Assembly (NCBI RefSeq): GCF_035594765.1
Contig: NC_085846.1
Span: forward strand, 14,929,190-14,993,189
DNA: 64,000 nucleotides
Direction: 5' to 3'
Source of the DNA: Anolis carolinensis
Lineage: Eukaryota
Shown: positions 26,501 through 61,022 of the stretch, piece by piece
Layout: each line of letters starts with the position of its first letter
How positions within the stretch are numbered: position 1 is the stretch's first letter
Notes under the pieces: generated by a model
The model's input: the letters and a program-made list of their open reading frames with translations, nothing else
The model's database searches: none
What the model was told of the DNA's origin: nothing
Program-made: the position numbers and the translations under genes

Positions 26501-26644
26501 TAATGACAATCTTTATTTTTGAGATGTAAGATCTCAGTAGGGTGCAGGTAACAGGTTCTTTTGGCTTTCCATTTGCTGGAGGAGGATAGAAGGAGTTTTG
26601 TTTACAGGGACAATATAAGTTTTCATGCCTTTCCCCCAAAGGCC

Positions 26645-27103
26645 ATGGCTGGGTCACAGGTACGTTGCCTGGAAAGTGAGGCGCCATATCTGAAAATAAC
26701 AGAATCAAACCCTGAATTTTATTACTGCGAGGGTCAACGGCTGGCCCTTGAAGCCTTGCTCTCTGAAGGGGAGGAGGCCTTTAAGAAGAGCCTCATTCAG
26801 GAAAAGTTGCGCCCTTTTCTGTCAGATGCAGAACTCCGGGAGCTGAAAGCAGAAGTGAAAGAAGAAGATTGGCAAACATCTGAACCTGTAGAACTGGGGA
26901 AATTGAACCATGATGGTGATGAGTCCAGTTTCACTTACTGGCCAGGACGATCAGATGAGCCCACTCCAGAGCTGGAACTGGGGTGGCCAAGCAACAATGT
27001 TTGGAAAGGGATTACAAGAGCAGAGGTTTACACACATCCACCGGGAGAAGGAGCACCGCACATCAAGGAGCTGGTCCGCAGGAGTATCCAACAGGCTGAC
27101 AAG
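26645..27103 (+). CDS. FAM83E: FAM83E coding exon 1 (DUF1669/PLD-like N-terminal domain)
   Basis: Kozak GCCATGG at 26645. Peptide MAGSQVRCL...FYYCEGQRLALEALLSEGEEAF...TYWPGRSDEPTPELELGWP...HPPGEGAPHIKELVRRSIQQADK is typical FAM83. Donor AAG|gtatta, phase 0, 459 nt. Confidence 0.93.
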
Positions 27104-27354
27104 GTATTATTGAAGGGATTATCTGGGCCATCTTTCTAGCCCTCATGATGGATTTGGAGAAAGGTCTTACATTATTTGGACCAGCTGTGTCCAACCTTTG
27201 GCCCACCAGGTGTTTTGGACTTCAACTCCCAGAAGCCTTGGCCTGCTTGTCCAATGGTCAGAAATTCTGGGAGTGAAAGTTCAAAACACCTGGAGGACCA
27301 AAGGTTGGACACCACTACATGTAGACTTAATTTAGAAAATTATCTTCTTCAACA

Positions 27355-36343: not shown

Positions 36344-36718
36344 ATGACACATTCCTGGTGCCTAGGTCTTGTATGCCTTCTGGTCTGTGTGTTGCCCTCC
36401 GTTTTTTCCAAGGACTGCTACTATTGTGATGTCAGTCCCACCACCAAATGTCCCTCTATCAAGATGAGTTGTGAAGAAGATCAAGACTGCTATGTGGGTG
36501 AAGGAGTTGCATTGGGAGTCCCAATGGTTCACAACAAGGGCTGTACCCGTGCCATCAACTGTGGGAAAGAGCAGCCTGTGACCTATAGGGGGATCACCTA
36601 CAGCTTGGTTACCATCTGCTGTAATGGACAGCTGTGCAACACAGCGGAGGCCATAGCAAAACCTTCTCTCTTTCTGCTGCTTGCCTTCACCATCATGCTT
36701 CTGCTGGGCTTCATTTGA
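36344..36718 (+). CDS. SPACA4: SPACA4/Bouncer-type Ly6/uPAR (three-finger) GPI-anchored protein, nested in FAM83E intron 3
   Basis: 124 aa. N-terminal signal peptide, 10-Cys LU domain (KDCYYC...NKGC...CG.E.PVTYRGITYSL...CCNGQLCN) and hydrophobic C-terminal GPI signal. Closely resembles mammalian SPACA4 as I recall it, and SPACA4 is known to nest in FAM83E. Confidence 0.93.
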   Translation: MTHSWCLGLVCLLVCVLPSVFSKDCYYCDVSPTTKCPSIKMSCEEDQDCYVGEGVALGVPMVHNKGCTRAINCGKEQPVTYRGITYSLVTICCNGQLCNTAEAIAKPSLFLLLAFTIMLLLGFI

Positions 36719-45962: not shown

Positions 45963-46566
45963 CTTCACGTGGACTGATGCTCGCTTGAACCGTCAACTTG
46001 TCACACGGCTTACAGGAGAAGTGACAGAAGCTTTTGACCGGGAATTTCGAACCTTGTATGCTGCCTCCTGTCCCTTGCCAACTCTGGAGGTGTCACCTCG
46101 GTCTCAGCCCACATCCACAACTCCATTGCCAACCCCCAATGGCCCAGATGCAGCTCCATTCATCAGTGTCCTGGATGGGGTGCAGCTATCCAACCGTATT
46201 TCAGAGCGGCGTTCTGTGGCTCCTCAACCTGTGGCCAAAAGCCGTGCTGGCGAGTGGGATCTCGTATTAGCCTCACCAGCCACAGCAGAAGACCCTATGC
46301 TACCTGTCGCATCTCCTGAGGTATCAATCCGAAACCGGCTTGCAGCATGGCGTGGCAAGGATATTTCCGGAGGGGGCCAGCAGGGCACTCCTGAGGGACA
46401 CAACGCTCTAAGTGATATTCTTAGGAATGTACAACGGAATCGGCTCTCAGTAGCCAAAACTACAGGGGCCCGTCCAAGTAAGTCACTGTGGGATCTCAGC
46501 CGGCTCTCCGGATCCAGCACAACAGGATGGGGATGGAATGGGACAGATTCACCTGAGGATGCCAAG
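45963..46566 (+). CDS. FAM83E: FAM83E coding exon 4
   Basis: Acceptor tctcctcaacag|C completes AGC. FTWTDARLNRQLVTRLTGEVTEAFDREFRTLYAAS contains the FxxxF CK1-docking motif; ALSDILRNVQR...GARPSKSLWDLSRLS is FAM83E-like. Donor AAG|gtaagc; 604 nt. Confidence 0.94.
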
Positions 46567-47760
46567 GTAAGCACTGCTCACCTTGAGTTGGAACTCAAGT
46601 CAATGGTTCATTTTACAGACCCCAGCCTTCTTGTCCCCCACTATCCACTGCTCCAGTTATCAATTCCTTTTCTTCTCAGTGAATCTTTAGCTCCTGGTCC
46701 CTGCAGAGCTTAGCAATTTTCCTTTCTCAACTACAGTTCCTAGAATCCCACAATCAGAATGGCCATTGGCTCATAAATAAAAAGCTTGGTAAAGGCAGAA
46801 AATATCAGCTCATTCTCTACTAATTTTCTTCCATTGTATTTTCCCCCTACTATAGCTCTATTATTAGATTGCAACTGCTATCATTGTTGTTATAATTAAC
46901 CAAACAGTATCACTTCCTATAAAACTATATTTTTGTTATGTGCCTTCAAGCGGACTCCAACTTACAGCAACCCTATCATTGGGTTTTACCAGTAATTGAG
47001 ATTTTTCATTGTCATCATCAGAGATCAAAAGAGTATGATTTGCCCAAAGTCACCCAGTGTGTTGCCAGGGGCGAGTAGGAATTCAAACCCTAATTTTCTA
47101 TTTTAAAAAAAACTTGGAAAAAAAAGCAAACTTGTTTACTACCTCCTACACTTTTTTAAACAAAATAATGCAGATTGCTTAGAACTTAGCCTCTAACCCA
47201 GAAAGAGCATATTAACTGTAGTTTTTTCTAGACACATCCCAGTCCATGTCTGAAAGAAGCATACTTTGCACTTGATAGCAAATTAATGTTTTGATTAAGG
47301 GTTCTAGTGGGACAGTATTTCCTTGCATCTATATGATATTTTTGACTGCTGGTCATTTGTGTAGTGGGGGAAATGACAGACAGATAAAAACCATAGGAAA
47401 ACCTTGTGTCTCTGCAAATTTGGCACTTGAATCAGACAGCTGGTGTGCTTACTCATAAGTAAGGACTCCAGTCTGCAGTATGAAAAGGCAAGCTGGCATG
47501 CCTACTCAAAAGCAGACTGACTTGAGGAAATGCCTGTGTCTCACATTAGACTAAAGTTTTTCTTCCCTTGTAAACCGATCAGGTCTCAAGATAGTAGCTG
47601 AATCTGCTGTGCAAGCCATGAACTAGGGGCTAGTTTCAAACAAGTCTCAATTAATCCGTGTTGTCCCATATTTTCAGTTGGTTCTAAAATGCCTCAGATT
47701 TTCTCTTCTCCTCCCCCTGTTCTTTTTCATCCTTTGCTTACTTCAGTTGCTAGTGGCTGA

Positions 47761-53963: not shown

Positions 53964-55258
53964 CATTCAAACTATGACTTATTCTTTATGCAAGGAAGTA
54001 GTGGGTGAACTATGGCCCTGTAAAAGTTTTTGGATGGCAGTTTCCATCATTTGTGACTGCTCATCATGCTAATTGTAGCTGATGGGAGCTGCACTAAGCA
54101 GAAACATCTGGAAGACTGCAGGATCCCTAATTGTGTCCTAAATTTGTTCCATTTCAGAGTTCTAACAGGCATGGGTGGATAGTGATATTTGTTGTAAATA
54201 AACAATAGGGAATTAGAACCTTCTTGCAGAACTATTGCAAATCTTATGAAGATTCTGATCTAGTGTGTGCTCCCCAACCTTTCCCAGCATTTAAAGAATC
54301 TGCAATCCTCTCAGGACCAGGTTCTTGCATCCTGTTAGACTCCGTAGTATATCTACCAAGGTTGCAAGGAGCTGATCACAATCAAATCCACTAACTTTTT
54401 TTGGTAACTAAGTGGGCAACTCTATGCCTTCAAGGCGGAAAAGGCATCTGAACAGCAACAGAAGGCGATTAATAGGATTCCAGATGTTTTCTCTGAAATG
54501 AATGCATCCATTACAAGGAAATCATTTCCTCAACACTCACAACAGGATACCTGTAACTGAGGGAAATGAGACACCACCAGTTACTGTATGTATTATAAGG
54601 AGTGTACACAGTTCAGACCAGAATTATACAGTTCTCACACAGGTGCCTGTGAATTGGCTAGTGGCAATGACAATGTCAGTGATGAGGTGCCATTATCCTT
54701 CTAGTGGTGACCAAAGAGCTCTGAAGAAAATCCATAGGCCCCAAGACACATTTACAAAGCAGCAGTTAAATATTTTTAAAAGGAAATGCTAGAATTATGT
54801 AGGTTTCTACAATTCCTTCACTCTCATCAAATAAATGGTTAGCATGCTCCAGTGCTGAAAATCCATATGTAAAGCTCTTTTTAAATACTCTCCTGCATTA
54901 GCTATTAACACCAGGCTTATTAACATACCAAATAAATCCTTTGTGCATTGGAAAGTGGGGGGAACAAGCATACAAAAATATGGATGTTGTGCCCTCTAGA
55001 GGCTGGATTCCTAAAGGCAACCATTTTCTGCAGCATCACATCCAAGTTTGAATGAATCAGAACAGCCTACCCAGCACATCCCCAAAGTGATCTTGTTTTG
55101 GAAGGGCTTGTCTAGACTAAGCCAACTAAGTGCAAAGCCGACTGACCCCTGCAAGGCTGGAACTAACTATTTTCACAACCTTCAGGAACCTTACAATAGT
55201 GAAACAAAACCTGGGTTCCTTGAGTGCCTCTGTTCCTTCCTTCCTACGTCTGCCAGAG

Positions 55259-55272
55259 TCAACAGGAAGTAG
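55259..55272 (-). CDS. Unnamed LOTUS-domain gene, terminal coding exon
   Basis: Strong acceptor ttccttcctcttttacag| then (G)CT ACT TCC TGT TGA. The seven exons total 834 nt = 277 aa + stop. Confidence 0.6.
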
Positions 55273-55392
55273 CTGTAAAAGAGGAAGGAATATAATAGAG
55301 ATGTTTAGATCACAAGGTAGGATGCCTAGCTAGATGAGATCATGGATCAATCTCGAGAGGCAAGACAGACAAAATGGGAAAGCCACACTCAC

Positions 55393-55623
55393 CTGGGTCC
55401 CACTGCACAAGCCACCGAGAAGTTCCCTTACTCGAGAGCTTAGTCCTGATCCAAGGCATGGCCTGTAAGAACCTGAGGCTGTCTCTGTAGCCATATTCCA
55501 TGCTGATCTTGCACAGCTTGACCTCATGCTCCTTCCACAGCATCATCTCCAGTTTTTCCAAGCGCAAACCCAAAGGAAACAGAACCAAAATACTTCTTAA
55601 GAGAGAAATCACATCCAAATCAC
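55393..55623 (-). CDS. Unnamed gene, coding exon 6 encoding a LOTUS/OST-HTH-like domain
   Basis: Consensus sites tttattgctttccag| and CAG|gtgagt; 231 nt, phase 1-1. DLDVISLLRSILVLFPLGLRLEKLEMMLWKEHEVKLCKISMEYGYRDSLRFLQAMPWIRTK matches the LOTUS pattern LRS-L..G-L...LE..GY/F...(F)L..MP. Confidence 0.75.
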
Positions 55624-56152
55624 CTGGAAAGCAATAAAGGGTGATCAGAAACAAAGAAAAGGTTGATTGGAAATGACCTGGCTAATCCTTATTCTGTGTT
55701 CATGCCAAACATCATAGTTAAATTTTCAACTACTCAGTTGCACTTGTTTCCCACCCTTCCTTTACTGAGCTCTAAGTGTCATAAATGGATCTCCTCCTCT
55801 TACTTACTTTATTTTCAAAACCTCCCTTTAGGATGTGAGGCTGAAAGAGAGAGAATTGAGGCTGGTCCAAGGTCAACCAGTGAGACTCATGGTTCAGCAC
55901 AGCCAACAAGCACTGAAGCCCACAGCTTCCTACAATAAAGGTTCCCCACCCATTTTCACATAAACTAGGATCCCCCAGCAAAGAAAAGTACAACATACTG
56001 CATCTCAGCCTTTTCATGATCTCAGTAACCAAATCCAAACTATTTCCCAAAAAGTATATAATGAGTACAGCTTAGTGCCTAAGATCCCTTTGGGTCCATA
56101 TTTAGAGGGAAGTAGGATAAATACAACAGACAGACAGACAGATCCTTCCTAC

Positions 56153-56293
56153 GTTTATCAACTGAAGAAGATTTCTTTGGCCACTCATACAATGGATCCA
56201 GCTCATCGGAAGTAAAGTCATCAGGATTATAAGAAGCCTTGCATTGTCTCTGGCCAGCTTTCTTCTTGCACAGGATTGTGGACTGGGACTGGG
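56153..56293 (-). CDS. Unnamed LOTUS-domain gene, coding exon 5
   Basis: Acceptor gttgattctttag|, donor C|gtagga; 141 nt, phase 1-1 (QSQSTILCKKKAGQRQCKASYNPDDFTSDELDPLYEWPKKSSSVDK). Confidence 0.65.
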
Positions 56294-56613
56294 CTAAAGA
56301 ATCAACAGCGATGAAAATCAGCAAATGAGACCACATGTTTTATAAAGAAACTCGCCCTGCTGTTGGTTAAAGCAACCCAGAAAAGAATGATCAATTATAT
56401 CTCTGAAAATGCTCTAAATTATTGTAATATCCTCCACTCCCCAAAACAAGCAGACGGTATTCATTTGTTCTACATTATGCCTTGGAGAGGTACTTTTCAG
56501 ACTAGAACCCAAAGAATCCCACACCCAGTTTAGCCCATTACTGTGCTAATTGAGAAGTTCTGAGAACAGGTCTAGAACTTATCTTACCCAGTTCTTGTCT
56601 AAATTGACCTCAC

Positions 56614-56692
56614 CATGCTGAGTACTTTCAAACAGATAGCTTCTAGTACTACCAGTACTGTGCAGGTATTCAGTACAACAGCTCACTGTTCC
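56614..56692 (-). CDS. Unnamed LOTUS-domain gene, coding exon 4
   Basis: Acceptor tttttttatctgcaaaag|GGA, donor G|gtgagg; 79 nt, phase 0-1 (GTVSCCTEYLHSTGSTRSYLFESTQH). An alternative phase-1 acceptor exists at 56724. Confidence 0.5.
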
Positions 56693-56954
56693 CTTTTGCA
56701 GATAAAAAAAGTGCCTGGAGGAATCTGGAGAAACTACAACTACAAAAACAGCCATAAGAGGCAAAACAGACACATTTTCCTCATCCTGGCGTTAAATCTG
56801 CATGAAAGGATTTTTCCCCTTCTCAGAGCTATGCATAGATGAAACAAAGTGTCTCTCAAAGTCGCCCTTATCTTACCCACAGACTTAAGATCATCAAGAA
56901 TTTCCACCAGCACCATAAAAGTACCTCAAAGTGACTACCAGAGAGGTTTATTAC

Positions 56955-57019
56955 CTTCAACTGTTCTGAACCCTTGATATCATATTGCCTTCTCTTAGTC
57001 CTTCTACACTGAACTAGTT
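56955..57019 (-). CDS. Unnamed LOTUS-domain gene, coding exon 3
   Basis: Strong acceptor ttctttgcctcttttgtccag|, donor AAG|gtaata; 65 nt, phase 1-0. Only one frame is open (LVQCRRTKRRQYDIKGSEQLK). Confidence 0.55.
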
Positions 57020-59028
57020 CTGGACAAAAGAGGCAAAGAACACATTATAAAATAATATGTTCTAAACATTAGGAAGATTCAAATAGCAGGAAAAATATTC
57101 CAGCTAAACATTAGGAAGAACTTCCTAATGGTAAGAGCTGTCCAGCAATGGAATATATTGTCTCAGAGTGTGGTGAAGTCTCCTTCTCTGGAGCTTTTGA
57201 AGCAGAGGCTGGATGGCCATCAGTCAGATGCTCTTATTGTATTTTCCTACATGGCAGGAAGTTGAACTGCATGGCCCTTGATGTATTTTCCAACTCAATG
57301 CGATTGCCTCTATAAAATTCATCCCTAGAGAGTTCTACCTTGGAATGCTGCATAGCAATAACACATCACCCCGCTAACAGTGTAAAGTAGGGATGAACAA
57401 GGTATGGCCTGCAAGTGGTATACAATCAAGGCCATTCTTGTGACTCCACCCCCAACTCCTTGGTGTTTAAAAAAAATCTCCCTAATGTTCCCAATTGAGC
57501 TTTAAGAGAATGAGGGCACTTTTCCACAGTTTTAGCTCCCATTTAGGTTGAGAAAAAGGTATTTTTTATAAACATGGACTCCCACTCACTTTCTTGTCTG
57601 ATAAAAATGTCCACCCTAGGCTTAATTTTGGTGCAGGGGGAGACTGTAAACATGGCCAAAATAATCCCATGTTCCCTAGAGGGCATTTGGATGATGCAGC
57701 CCTCCAGGATCCTCAAGGTGGGGCAATGTAACCATCTAGCCTTCCACCGTTGCCCAGCCTTGTTGTAAAGCCAAACAAATGCACAACGTCCCATTTTACT
57801 CCTTTCACCAAATGTATGTACTCTAGCAATATATTGGATAACAAGTTGAACACTAACTGCTTGTGACACCTCAGAATGGTGGAGGTCCATTAAAAGCTTG
57901 ACAGATCAGTGCCTTGGCCTTTAAGCAATCTAAATAACTATCATCCAAATCAAGCAGCAAAAACTCATACAGGGATAGGCACTAAATGGATTTAGAACAA
58001 AAGCCAATGCTGCCATTATGTCCCATGCTTGACCAGGCACTGAAACCCGGCAAATTGATTCAGCTCCCACTGGGTTCTGCAACTTGCTTTTGGTGACCCT
58101 GGCTGGCTTAAATCATAAAATTGTGGCCACAGATTAACACTGTCACACTCTCAGACCCCCTCCATTAATCTGCCAACAAAAAGGTTTAACAGTAAGAAAA
58201 AATTATGACCCCAGCTGCACTTCTAGACATGTAATGTAATTTCTAAAAACTAGTAATTGAAAGATAGGATAATGATCCACATAAGACTAATGTTTGGTGT
58301 GATAAATTTCCCAACTCGAAACTATGGGGTGCTGAAATTAAAAAGACAAAGTTCTCTGTCTCCTGGCAGCTGTGTAAACCACCTAGAAGACAATTTTAAA
58401 AACCAAACCAAGCACTGCCCATAACTTGAAAAAAGGACTGAAGAGTGAGTCTCAGGCCACTTCCCTCTGGGAGACAATCAAAAACCCATAAAAGATCCTT
58501 TTGGACCCATTTTGGACCACTCAAACATATTGTTAAAGTACTTTCTTTAATTCACAAAATTAAAATAATCAACAGGACAGAATACTTTTAGAAAATGGTA
58601 ATAATTCTTCTAGAAATATGTCAAAAGACCTTGTTTATTACACGAGGCATGCAATTTGCAATTACAGCATGTCCACAGTGTCTTTGCCTTTGATTTGTGT
58701 GACTTTGCTCTCTTCCATTCTTTAACAAACGACAAATAATATGTTAATGACCTCCTTTTGTAAAAGAAATGCTCCCCACCCAGAGAGGAGAAAGGCTACA
58801 GTACAGAATAATCTTGTCTCATAATCATATATAATAATCAATAAATACAATTTTATTTATATCCACCCTATCTCCCCGAGGTATTATTCATATATAGGAA
58901 TATTGTACTGTTGATAAACTCTAGCTTTCTGCAGCAGGAAAAACCAACATAGTAAAAGGTTATGCCCCGAAGTGTACATTGACCCCACCGAAGTGAACCT
59001 TAAAATAGATAACGCAGATAAAACTCAC

Positions 59029-59166
59029 TCAAAGATGGAACAAACTGTGGAGATGGATCTTCCTGAGGTCTTAGCTTTAAGGTTTCTGTCTCTGGTTGTA
59101 TCCGTTCTGTTTCCAGCAAATGATGAGCTGACTCCTCGGCAGAAGTCACCGACACAACCAAACGAG
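59029..59166 (-). CDS. Unnamed LOTUS-domain gene, coding exon 2
   Basis: Acceptor gattgtttacag|, donor A|gtgagt; 138 nt, phase 1-1, open frame RLVVSVTSAEESAHHLLETERIQPETETLKLRPQEDPSPQFVPSL. Confidence 0.65.
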
Positions 59167-59470
59167 CTGTAAACAATCAAACCATGTTTGAATAACTTAA
59201 CTCCTTCTTCCTCTGGAGCTCAAGAGTAGCCCAGACACACCAAAATCAAAAATTGTGTACAAATTGTGTGGTTCCGTCCTGCTCAGTTGAAGGTAATACT
59301 GAGGAGAAAGGACACACAGCTGAGCACCTTAAAGCTCTCTTTTCCCCATTCTTCCTTCCCAACTCTCTTTTTAGATGACACTGCCAAGAAATGCTCTGCC
59401 GGCCTGTTTATGTTGGATAAGTGAGACTCGGCTATATATGTATATATAGGTGTGTGTGTGTGTGCGTATA

Positions 59471-60430
59471 CAGTAGAGTCGCTTATCCAAACTTCACTTA
59501 TCCAACGTTCTGTATTATCCAACGCAGTTTGCCTTTTAGTAGTCAATGCATTCAATACTTTGCAATGTTTTGGTGCTAAATTCGTAAATACAGTAATTAC
59601 TACATAATGTTCCAGTGAGGGAGACGTGGGTTTAAAAAAGAATTTTCAAAGATACTTGTAATGACTATAAGTCCCATATGTTTTGATTGACCTAAGTTGC
59701 AAAAGGCCTATGTTTGAGGAAGGCCTGCACTTGAGAGAAAATGCTGATGTTTGGGAAAAGAGTTGTCCCAGAGAAAAGAAGTTACTTTCAAATAATAACA
59801 ATACATCAAGTCAGAACCGGTTCCCATACGATTTTGAGCATATACTTGCAACAAGTCAGGGTCAATAACATGAAAACACCATTGTCTAAAGAATTACATG
59901 TTGTTACAGCATAGAAAACCAATGGGATTGCATGATGGTTAAGATGCTTGTGACGTAGACAACATTAGACAAATGGGGTAAATGATCTTTGTAAGCCAAT
60001 AAGGATATGCTTGCTAATTCCTGTGGAGGTGATAAAACCCTCGCAACCATTTTGGAAATTCGGACAAATCCTTTGATTGCATGTATGCATGTATTTGTCA
60101 CATTGCTATGGCCACGCAATAAATAGTTCTTTTGCAGTTTGAAGATCCAACTTTTGTGGTGTTTTTCCTCGCCCTCTTCACAGAAAAGGGGCCTCCTGCT
60201 TTTGACTTTGGATTAAGAGGAGTATTTTTACATCTTTTACATCCTTGCCCCTTCACCAGCATATTGAACTGCTTTTTCTGTCGATTTGTTGTAAAACTTG
60301 ATGTTTAGGTGCTTAATTTGTAAAATCATGATGTAATTTGACATTTAATAGGTTTTTCCTTAATTCCTCCTTATTATCCAACATTTTTGCTTATCCAGCC
60401 CGTTTATGTTGGATAAGCGAGACTCTACTG
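59471..60430. mobile_element. Tc1/mariner-type MITE interrupted by a solo LTR
   Basis: TIR CAGTAGAGTC..CTTATCCAA with TA TSD; the body resumes after 60259. Confidence 0.8.
59616..60255 (+). mobile_element. Solo LTR (640 bp)
   Basis: TG...CA ends (TGAGGG / CCCCTTCA), 4-bp TSD CCAG (59612-59615, 60256-60259), internal CCAAT and AATAAA (60118-60123). Confidence 0.75.
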
Positions 60431-60549
60431 TATATGTACATATGTGTGTGTGTATAAATATATATGGTATGTATATGTTATATATGCACACATACACACA
60501 AAACCTCAACAGCAACCTGTTTCCCCATGGTTAGAAAAGGAGCACCTAC

Positions 60550-60715
60550 TCCTGTTTGGCGATGGATATTCTTCCCACTCCTTGGAGGAAAATGGTGAAT
60601 CGCTCCGTAGTCTCTTGTAAAGATGTAGGCCTTCGTCCGAGGATGGTGCTGGGCTTTTCTGAGGAAGCCCTTCTTGACTGGAAACCACAACAACTTCCAG
60701 GGGTTGGTTCTGCAT
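60550..60715 (-). CDS. Unnamed LOTUS-domain gene, coding exon 1 (start)
   Basis: Acceptor ttctgttttccatag at 60747, 31-nt UTR with in-frame TAG, then GCCATGC. MQNQPLEVVVV...EEYPSPNR; donor A|gtaggt, phase 1. Confidence 0.6.
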
Positions 60716-61022
60716 GGCGATCTTTAACTTGGGCCTCTAGTCTCCACTATGGAAAACAGAAGTACTTTTAGCAGGCCGGCCTACACAACTGAGGGAAAAA
60801 GACCTCCCAGAGTCTCCTCTGACTTATGTGAGGCCTACACTTTGTTCCAAACAAAGACAAGACATTCATTTCAAGCTGGAGGCCTCACCAAAAAAGCTTA
60901 AGAAAGCTGTGAAGACTACTTCAATCTCCACCAAAGAAAGGTGAGTAAATAAAATAGGCGGAGCCTGTGAAAAGGGCCTTCTCTTTTGGACTTTCCCCAA
61001 TGTCAATAATAATAATAATGTA

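What the first reader, a model, noticed from the sequence alone, without database searches (positions are those of the whole stretch)
55259..60746. Unrecognised multi-exon gene encoding a disordered protein with a single C-terminal LOTUS (OST-HTH) domain: candidate new vertebrate germ-granule scaffold
Seen in sequence: seven minus-strand segments with GT-AG sites join in one open frame (phases 1,1,0,1,1,1; 834 nt, 277 aa), from a Kozak ATG preceded by an in-frame stop. The last large exon reads LLRSIL..PLGLRLEKLE....YGYRDSLRFLQAMP. As I recall it, the TDRD5 LOTUS-1 pattern is IRSLL...GLSPQELE...GYRSTMELVLDMP. Established: vertebrate LOTUS proteins are TDRD5, TDRD7 and MARF1, all large multidomain proteins. 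LOTUS + disordered-region proteins (Oskar N-terminus, nematode MIP/EGGD) organise germ granules and bind Vasa-type helicases or RNA. Inference: this is a short LOTUS-only protein with no Tudor, NYN or RRM domain, which fits none of the known vertebrate genes. I do not recall such a gene beside mammalian FAM83E, where SULT2B1 is the convergent neighbour.
Basis: partly seen in the sequence, partly recalled or inferred. Interest (0 to 1): 0.9.

Follow-up and report, generated by a model that had tools for sequence, protein, structure and literature searches.

The report
Squamate small single-LOTUS protein gene
This is a real lizard-and-snake gene, already listed in RefSeq as an uncharacterized protein. 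It encodes a short, mostly disordered protein ending in one minimal LOTUS domain, so non-mammalian tetrapods have LOTUS genes beyond TDRD5, TDRD7 and MARF1, but nothing yet shows it builds germ granules.

Summary
The window is Anolis carolinensis. The gene is real but already annotated: RefSeq LOC100556011, "uncharacterized protein", 229 aa. It has five coding exons totalling 690 nt, and all introns are phase 1. The two extra ones are not in the RefSeq protein and are not conserved, and I could not rebuild the 834-nt chain.

Orthologues with the same neighbours (Ig gene, then LOTUS gene, then convergent FAM83E) occur in iguanians, a lacertid and a gecko. Snake proteins group as orthologues too, but their neighbours were not checked. 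The LOTUS exon has dN/dS about 0.3.

The protein ends just after the last strand, so it lacks the C-terminal helix that Vasa binding requires. It is therefore a minimal LOTUS. A conserved NLS-like motif hints at nuclear import.

I read it as a fast-evolving RNA-binding adaptor that split off from an uncharacterized multi-LOTUS family of amphibians and reptiles. Expression could not be tested.

The parts
60550..60715 (-). Coding exon 1 (166 nt, residues 1-55 plus one base). Begins at the ATG, with an in-frame TAG 24 nt upstream. Donor GGA|GTAGGT.
   Evidence: 70% aa identity to Sceloporus
60602..60658 (-). NLS-like segment, residues 20-38. Fits a bipartite basic pattern in 6 of 8 orthologues. 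In Anolis only the K-R-L-R half is kept.
   Evidence: pattern match only; localisation not tested
59029..59166 (-). Coding exon 2 (138 nt, residues 57-101). Variable, P/E/Q-rich linker.
   Evidence: dN/dS above 1 over 26 codons
56153..56293 (-). Coding exon 3 (141 nt, residues 103-148).
   Evidence: 70% aa identity to Sceloporus
56178..56231 (-). Conserved acidic-aromatic short motif, Y-x-P-x-DFTSDELDP-x-YEWP (residues 123-140). Candidate partner-binding motif.
   Evidence: alignment A2; function inferred
55393..55623 (-). Coding exon 4 (231 nt, phase 1-1, residues 150-225). Encodes the whole minimal LOTUS domain.
   Evidence: dN/dS 0.27-0.35; donor CAG|GTGAGT identical in Anolis, Sceloporus and Podarcis
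55259..55272 (-). Coding exon 5 (14 nt; the last four residues, the first from a codon split with exon 4, then TGA). Not conserved in other squamates.
   Evidence: matches P0003; tails differ among orthologues
56955..57019 (-). Open frame and good splice sites, but absent from the RefSeq protein, and the segment has no similarity hit in the three squamate loci compared.
55808..55840 (-). Has two in-frame stops in the required phase, so it is not coding.

Best explanation
This is Anolis carolinensis LOC100556011, a real protein-coding gene so far found only in squamates. It encodes a 229-aa protein in two parts. The first is a roughly 150-residue low-complexity N-terminal part carrying two conserved short motifs: an NLS-like basic pair and an acidic-aromatic DFTSDELDPxYEWP motif. 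The second is a single C-terminal minimal LOTUS (OST-HTH) winged-helix domain encoded by one phase 1-1 exon. The gene is an offshoot of an uncharacterized family of multi-LOTUS repeat proteins found in amphibians, turtles, crocodilians and lizards. It sits between an Ig-domain gene and FAM83E in the four squamate genomes whose neighbours I checked. Most likely mechanism (inferred): the LOTUS domain binds RNA, probably G-rich or G-quadruplex RNA as other minimal LOTUS domains do. The disordered arm would then bring in a partner through its short motif and direct nuclear import or shuttling. On this reading it is a small, fast-evolving RNA adaptor, not a Vasa-activating scaffold.
Against: There is no expression data of any kind. 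Tissue, splice junctions and protein existence are all untested here. Alone, the Anolis domain is below Pfam's cut-off (14.1 versus 23.8 bits). RNA binding, nuclear import and partner recruitment are inferred from family behaviour and motif patterns only. In Anolis the first basic pair of the NLS-like motif is degenerate. Overall dN/dS of 0.5, with a linker above 1, shows weak constraint outside the domain.
Confidence: 0.6

Rival explanations
1. One reading: a germ-granule scaffold whose LOTUS domain recruits and activates the Vasa/DDX4 helicase, as Oskar, Tejas/TDRD5 and Tapas/TDRD7 do.
For: The fold is closest to the first LOTUS domains of TDRD7, TDRD5 and Tejas. The LOTUS-plus-disordered-region layout resembles Oskar and nematode MIP-1/2 (PMC8331183, listed).
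Against: Vasa binding needs the C-terminal alpha5 extension of extended LOTUS domains, and minimal LOTUS domains do not bind Vasa (PMC5458760; PMC7498356). This protein stops before that helix, and no conserved tail exists in the orthologues. By sequence its nearest relatives are multi-repeat proteins, not TDRD5/7. The NLS-like motif does not fit a cytoplasmic granule protein.
Confidence: 0.1
2. A protein-binding adaptor in which the minimal LOTUS domain docks an effector complex instead of RNA, as reported for Drosophila MARF1 LOTUS and CCR4-NOT.
For: PMC6168497 (title and abstract listed) reports MARF1 binding CCR4-NOT. The conserved W/Y-containing acidic motif would suit a second protein contact.
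Against: I made no test here. All individual minimal LOTUS domains tested in PMC7498356 bound G4 RNA, so RNA binding is the default expectation.
Confidence: 0.15
3. A decaying remnant or annotation artefact: a stray LOTUS exon left by rearrangement of a multi-LOTUS gene and stitched into a model by the annotation pipeline.
For: No RNA evidence was obtained here. Constraint outside the domain is weak. The terminal exon and tails vary between species. Introns align to Sceloporus at 70-78%, only slightly below the exons at about 81-82%.
Against: The frame is intact, with the same exon set and the same neighbours, in lineages separated since the gecko-iguanian split. The LOTUS exon has dN/dS about 0.3. 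N-terminal motifs are conserved. The donor site is perfectly conserved.
Confidence: 0.05

Closest known systems
Uncharacterized multi-LOTUS repeat proteins of amphibians and non-avian reptiles (e.g. Carettochelys LOC142024733, Tiliqua XP_066486183, Alligator LOC102569560, Geotrypetes LOC117367388); Pfam DUF7515 / OST-HTH
   Same: They are the nearest sequence relatives of the domain (30-37% identity per repeat, summed E down to 1e-57). They share the one-exon, phase 1-1 encoding of the domain. The squamate repeats are the sister clade in the tree. None has a Tudor, NYN or RRM domain.
   Different: They carry 3 to 9 repeats in 700-2000 aa and lie in tandem gene clusters. The Anolis gene has one domain. 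Its N-terminal 149 residues have no match in these proteins.
TDRD5 and TDRD7 (Tejas / Tapas) first LOTUS domains
   Different: Those are extended LOTUS domains with a Vasa-binding C-terminal helix, followed by Tudor domains. Here there is no extension and no Tudor domain. Sequence similarity is not significant (best PDB profile hit TDRD7, E 0.31).
MARF1 (Limkain b1)
   Same: It has minimal LOTUS domains without the C-terminal extension. Each tested one binds G4 RNA (PMC7498356).
   Different: MARF1 has NYN and RRM domains and eight LOTUS repeats. No MARF1 protein appeared among the 30 hits whose names I looked up, of 56 with E up to 1e-3.
Oskar N-terminal LOTUS; C. elegans MIP-1/MIP-2 (EGGD)
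   Different: These are extended, Vasa/GLH-binding domains in germ-plasm organisers. Oskar LOTUS also dimerises. Neither property was tested here, and the required extension is missing.

Membership tests
LOTUS / OST-HTH domain (PF12872) | Score at or above Pfam's gathering cut-off (23.8 bits) | tested here: not met
   14.1 bits, E 0.044. It is the only family hit and the register is correct. Homologues of the same domain do pass: P0029 33.4 bits, P0004 133.6 bits, and 11 of 69 aligned domains hit OST-HTH.
LOTUS / OST-HTH domain (PF12872) | Winged-helix fold superimposable on solved LOTUS domains and standing above generic winged helices | tested here: met
Extended LOTUS (Vasa-binding subclass) | Conserved C-terminal alpha5 helix after the beta-hairpin (PMC5458760) | tested here: not met
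   The protein ends 4 residues after the LOTUS exon's last full codon. The alignment to Oskar stops at residue 225, before L228. Orthologue tails are unrelated to one another.
Extended LOTUS (Vasa-binding subclass) | Binds and stimulates Vasa/DDX4 | not testable with these tools
TDRD5 / TDRD7 | Tudor domains C-terminal to the LOTUS domains | tested here: not met
   The full protein P0003 has no Pfam family at E up to 0.1, and at 229 aa there is no room for them.
MARF1 | NYN nuclease plus RRM plus tandem LOTUS repeats | tested here: not met
   One domain only, with no NYN or RRM hit.
Amphibian/reptile multi-LOTUS (DUF7515-type) family | Significant sequence homology of the domain and shared exon structure | tested here: met
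   E 1e-57 to 1e-10 against 36 proteins. 42 of 69 aligned domains hit DUF7515. Phase 1-1 single-exon repeats. Sister position in the tree.
Amphibian/reptile multi-LOTUS (DUF7515-type) family | Tandem array of several repeats | tested here: not met
   A single domain in all squamate orthologues.

The most novel reading that the evidence does not exclude
Amphibians and non-avian reptiles carry a fourth, lineage-restricted vertebrate LOTUS gene family. It comprises large tandem multi-LOTUS genes and, in squamates, this single-LOTUS offshoot beside FAM83E. Under this reading the family acts in germline or early-embryo RNA control independently of TDRD5/7 and MARF1. The small protein would be a nuclear or shuttling RNA adaptor, or a regulator of the large ones.
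Probability: 0.2. Interest if true: 0.7.

Novelty: new variant of a known kind. Interest (0 to 1): 0.45.

Why it matters
Work on LOTUS proteins in vertebrates centres on three genes: TDRD5, TDRD7 and MARF1. PMC7498356 states that these are the only three in mammals. This gene and its multi-repeat relatives show that other tetrapods have additional LOTUS genes. These are uncharacterized and fast-evolving, and standard domain annotation largely misses them: the precomputed Pfam entry for this protein is empty. A 229-aa protein with a lone minimal LOTUS domain is a simple natural test case for what a minimal LOTUS domain does on its own. Gene editing in Anolis would, to my knowledge (not checked here), make a knockout feasible.

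Tried and rejected
1. Single-sequence AF2 of the exon gave pLDDT 53 and was unusable. I repeated it with an alignment.
2. phmmer of the exon against PDB found nothing. The profile search gave TDRD7 first, but at E 0.31.
3. The word-indexed protein search with the 76-aa exon found nothing. That result is a length-band limit, not absence.
4. RNA evidence was not obtainable. The look-up of sequencing runs listed no run on record as RNA. The only Logan contig for a relative (L008) is unspliced. No transcript contig encodes the exact 229-aa protein.
5. Two brute-force scripts timed out, and targeted enumeration found no chain of that size.
6. The caecilian 280-aa single-LOTUS protein P0054 is not an orthologue. 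Its N-terminus does not match, and its domain groups with amphibian repeats.
7. Whether the turtle FAM83 gene next to the big LOTUS gene is FAM83E remains inconclusive: 55% identity over one exon, on the same strand, with no paralogues to compare.
8. Literature searches for the LOC identifiers, for DUF7515, and for LOTUS with Xenopus found nothing on this family.
9. Earlier scan notes: none nearby and none under the word LOTUS.
Searches used single exons by reference, or the database protein P0003 that a search had returned.

Full report
**What is there.** The window is green anole (Anolis carolinensis). The peptide of the large minus-strand exon (full codons 55621-55394, 76 aa) hits a 229-aa database protein at 100% identity over its residues 150-225 (P0003). 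The sources name it "uncharacterized protein LOC100556011", XP_003225078.1 / XP_008115427.1.

I checked the model exon by exon without building a joined sequence. Five coding exons reproduce all 229 residues, including the four split codons: 60715-60550, 59166-59029, 56293-56153, 55623-55393 and 55272-55259. Every internal boundary has AG and GT, and every intron is in phase 1. The ATG has a purine at -3 and an in-frame TAG 24 nt upstream.

The gene is therefore real as a model, but it is not unrecognised.
- A 65-nt segment (57019-56955) is open and has good splice sites, but it is absent from the RefSeq protein and the segment itself has no similarity hit in the other squamates.
- A 33-nt candidate (55840-55808) has two in-frame stops.
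- No open 84-nt AG..GT segment exists in intron 3.

**Is the domain a LOTUS domain?** Alone, the exon gives only a sub-threshold Pfam hit to OST-HTH: 14.1 bits against a cut-off of 23.8, E 0.044. It is the only family hit and the register is right.

A full HMMER scan of 1.84 billion representatives gave 56 hits. Beyond the orthologues, these are long proteins in which the domain recurs up to eight times (summed E 1e-57 to 1e-30). Several of them pass the OST-HTH cut-off clearly, for example 133.6 bits for P0004 and 33.4 bits for P0029. They also match Pfam DUF7515 over the same residues.

A language-model atlas search also returns only OST-HTH clusters, though at scores that count only as leads. 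I take the LOTUS assignment as established.

**Which kind of LOTUS?** Jeske et al. (PMC5458760) divide LOTUS domains into two classes. Extended domains have a C-terminal helix that is required for binding and stimulating Vasa. Minimal domains lack that helix and do not bind Vasa.

Here the protein ends four residues after the LOTUS exon's last full codon. The structural alignment to Oskar ends at Oskar residue 225, ahead of the interface residue L228. In eight orthologues the sequence after the domain is unrelated from species to species. The donor site CAG|GTGAGT right after the domain is identical in Anolis, Sceloporus and Podarcis, so the domain ends at that exon boundary in all three, and what follows comes from downstream exons that differ between species. 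This is a minimal LOTUS domain.

**Rest of the protein.** Residues 1-149 are rich in disorder-promoting residues (fraction 0.66; S 15%, P 10%, E 10%). They are homologous only to the other squamate small proteins. Two short stretches are conserved:
- Residues 20-38 fit a bipartite nuclear-localisation pattern in 6 of 8 species, and the K-[KR]-x-[KR] half is present in all 8.
- Residues 123-140 form an acidic-aromatic motif, Y-x-P-x-DFTSDELDP-x-YEWP.

**Conservation and origin.** Orthologues exist in iguanians (Sceloporus, Phrynosoma), lacertids (Lacerta, Podarcis), snakes (Crotalus, Naja) and a gecko (Paroedura). The gene order is the same in Anolis, Paroedura, Sceloporus and Podarcis: an Ig-domain gene (C19orf38-like), then the LOTUS gene, then a convergent FAM83E with a nested Ly6/uPAR gene.

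dN/dS is 0.27-0.35 for the LOTUS exon, 0.56-0.66 for exons 1 and 3, and 0.52 overall between Anolis and Sceloporus. The domain is under purifying selection and the rest evolves quickly.

In a tree of 69 domains, the squamate small-protein domains form one clade (97/97) whose branching follows the species tree. Its sister group, with moderate support (92/70), is the repeats of squamate large proteins, followed by one class of turtle repeats. The caecilian single-LOTUS protein groups with amphibian repeats and is an independent case.

In the turtle gene, each repeat is one phase 1-1 exon of 225-240 nt, as is the 231-nt Anolis exon. The large genes lie in tandem clusters in Alligator and Tiliqua. 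In the turtle Carettochelys the large gene is next to a FAM83 gene, but whether that gene is FAM83E is unresolved.

**How it most likely works.** Shown: the gene model, the fold, the minimal class, the conservation and the family relationship.

Inferred: the domain binds RNA. Every minimal LOTUS domain tested by Ding et al. bound G-rich or G-quadruplex RNA (PMC7498356). The disordered arm would carry a nuclear-import signal and a partner-binding motif, making the protein a small RNA adaptor. A Vasa-recruiting granule scaffold is unlikely on present evidence but is not excluded.

Tissue of expression is unknown. No run on record as RNA holds the locus. No transcript contig encodes the protein.

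**Known or new.** I found no paper that mentions this gene, its orthologues' identifiers or DUF7515. The gene is in RefSeq without a domain or a name. Three points appear to be new: the LOTUS assignment, the squamate-wide conservation, and the link to an uncharacterized multi-LOTUS family in amphibians and reptiles. The kind (LOTUS protein) is known, while the architecture and lineage are new, so I file it as a new variant of a known kind.

Noticed in passing
window 26561-27139 (+), 45985-46713 (+), 36344-36718 (+): FAM83E (SACK1 domain exon, E 7.5e-43, and the last exon) lies on the plus strand, convergent with the LOTUS gene. A 124-aa Ly6/uPAR ORF (SPACA4-like) lies between its exons. Podarcis has the same nested arrangement.
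   Followed up: partly
L003 10001-37865 (Carettochelys), L004 (Alligator), L005 (Tiliqua): Large uncharacterized multi-LOTUS genes (1400-1850 aa, up to nine repeats). In the turtle a three-exon unit (240 nt, 225-231 nt and about 141-144 nt) is repeated. In Alligator and Tiliqua a second LOTUS gene follows in tandem. In the turtle a FAM83 gene follows on the same strand.
   Followed up: partly
L006 20059-31377 (Sceloporus undulatus): A second, more diverged copy of the small LOTUS gene (exon 1 42% and LOTUS exon 35% aa identity to Anolis) lies upstream of the main copy. The annotated 364-aa Sceloporus protein carries a 98-residue N-terminal extension that the other orthologues lack, probably because the gene model spans both copies.
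   Followed up: no
window 54829-55059: A non-coding block about 200-430 nt downstream of the stop codon aligns to Podarcis (72% over 237 nt). Parts of it align to the gecko (83-84%), although introns no longer align at that distance. No frame is open. It may be a 3'UTR element or a shared repeat.
   Followed up: partly
window about 59400-59530 and 60390-60480 (intron 1): Intron 1 holds copies, in both orientations, of a roughly 30-40-nt motif next to CA/TA microsatellites, which looks like a repeat element.
   Followed up: no
L007 14006-14038, 17430-17528, 22866-22979 (Podarcis raffonei): Seven annotated isoforms use different exons after the LOTUS exon. Some of these lie inside the range of the convergent FAM83E gene. 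The C-terminal tail is therefore variable within a species as well as between species.
   Followed up: partly
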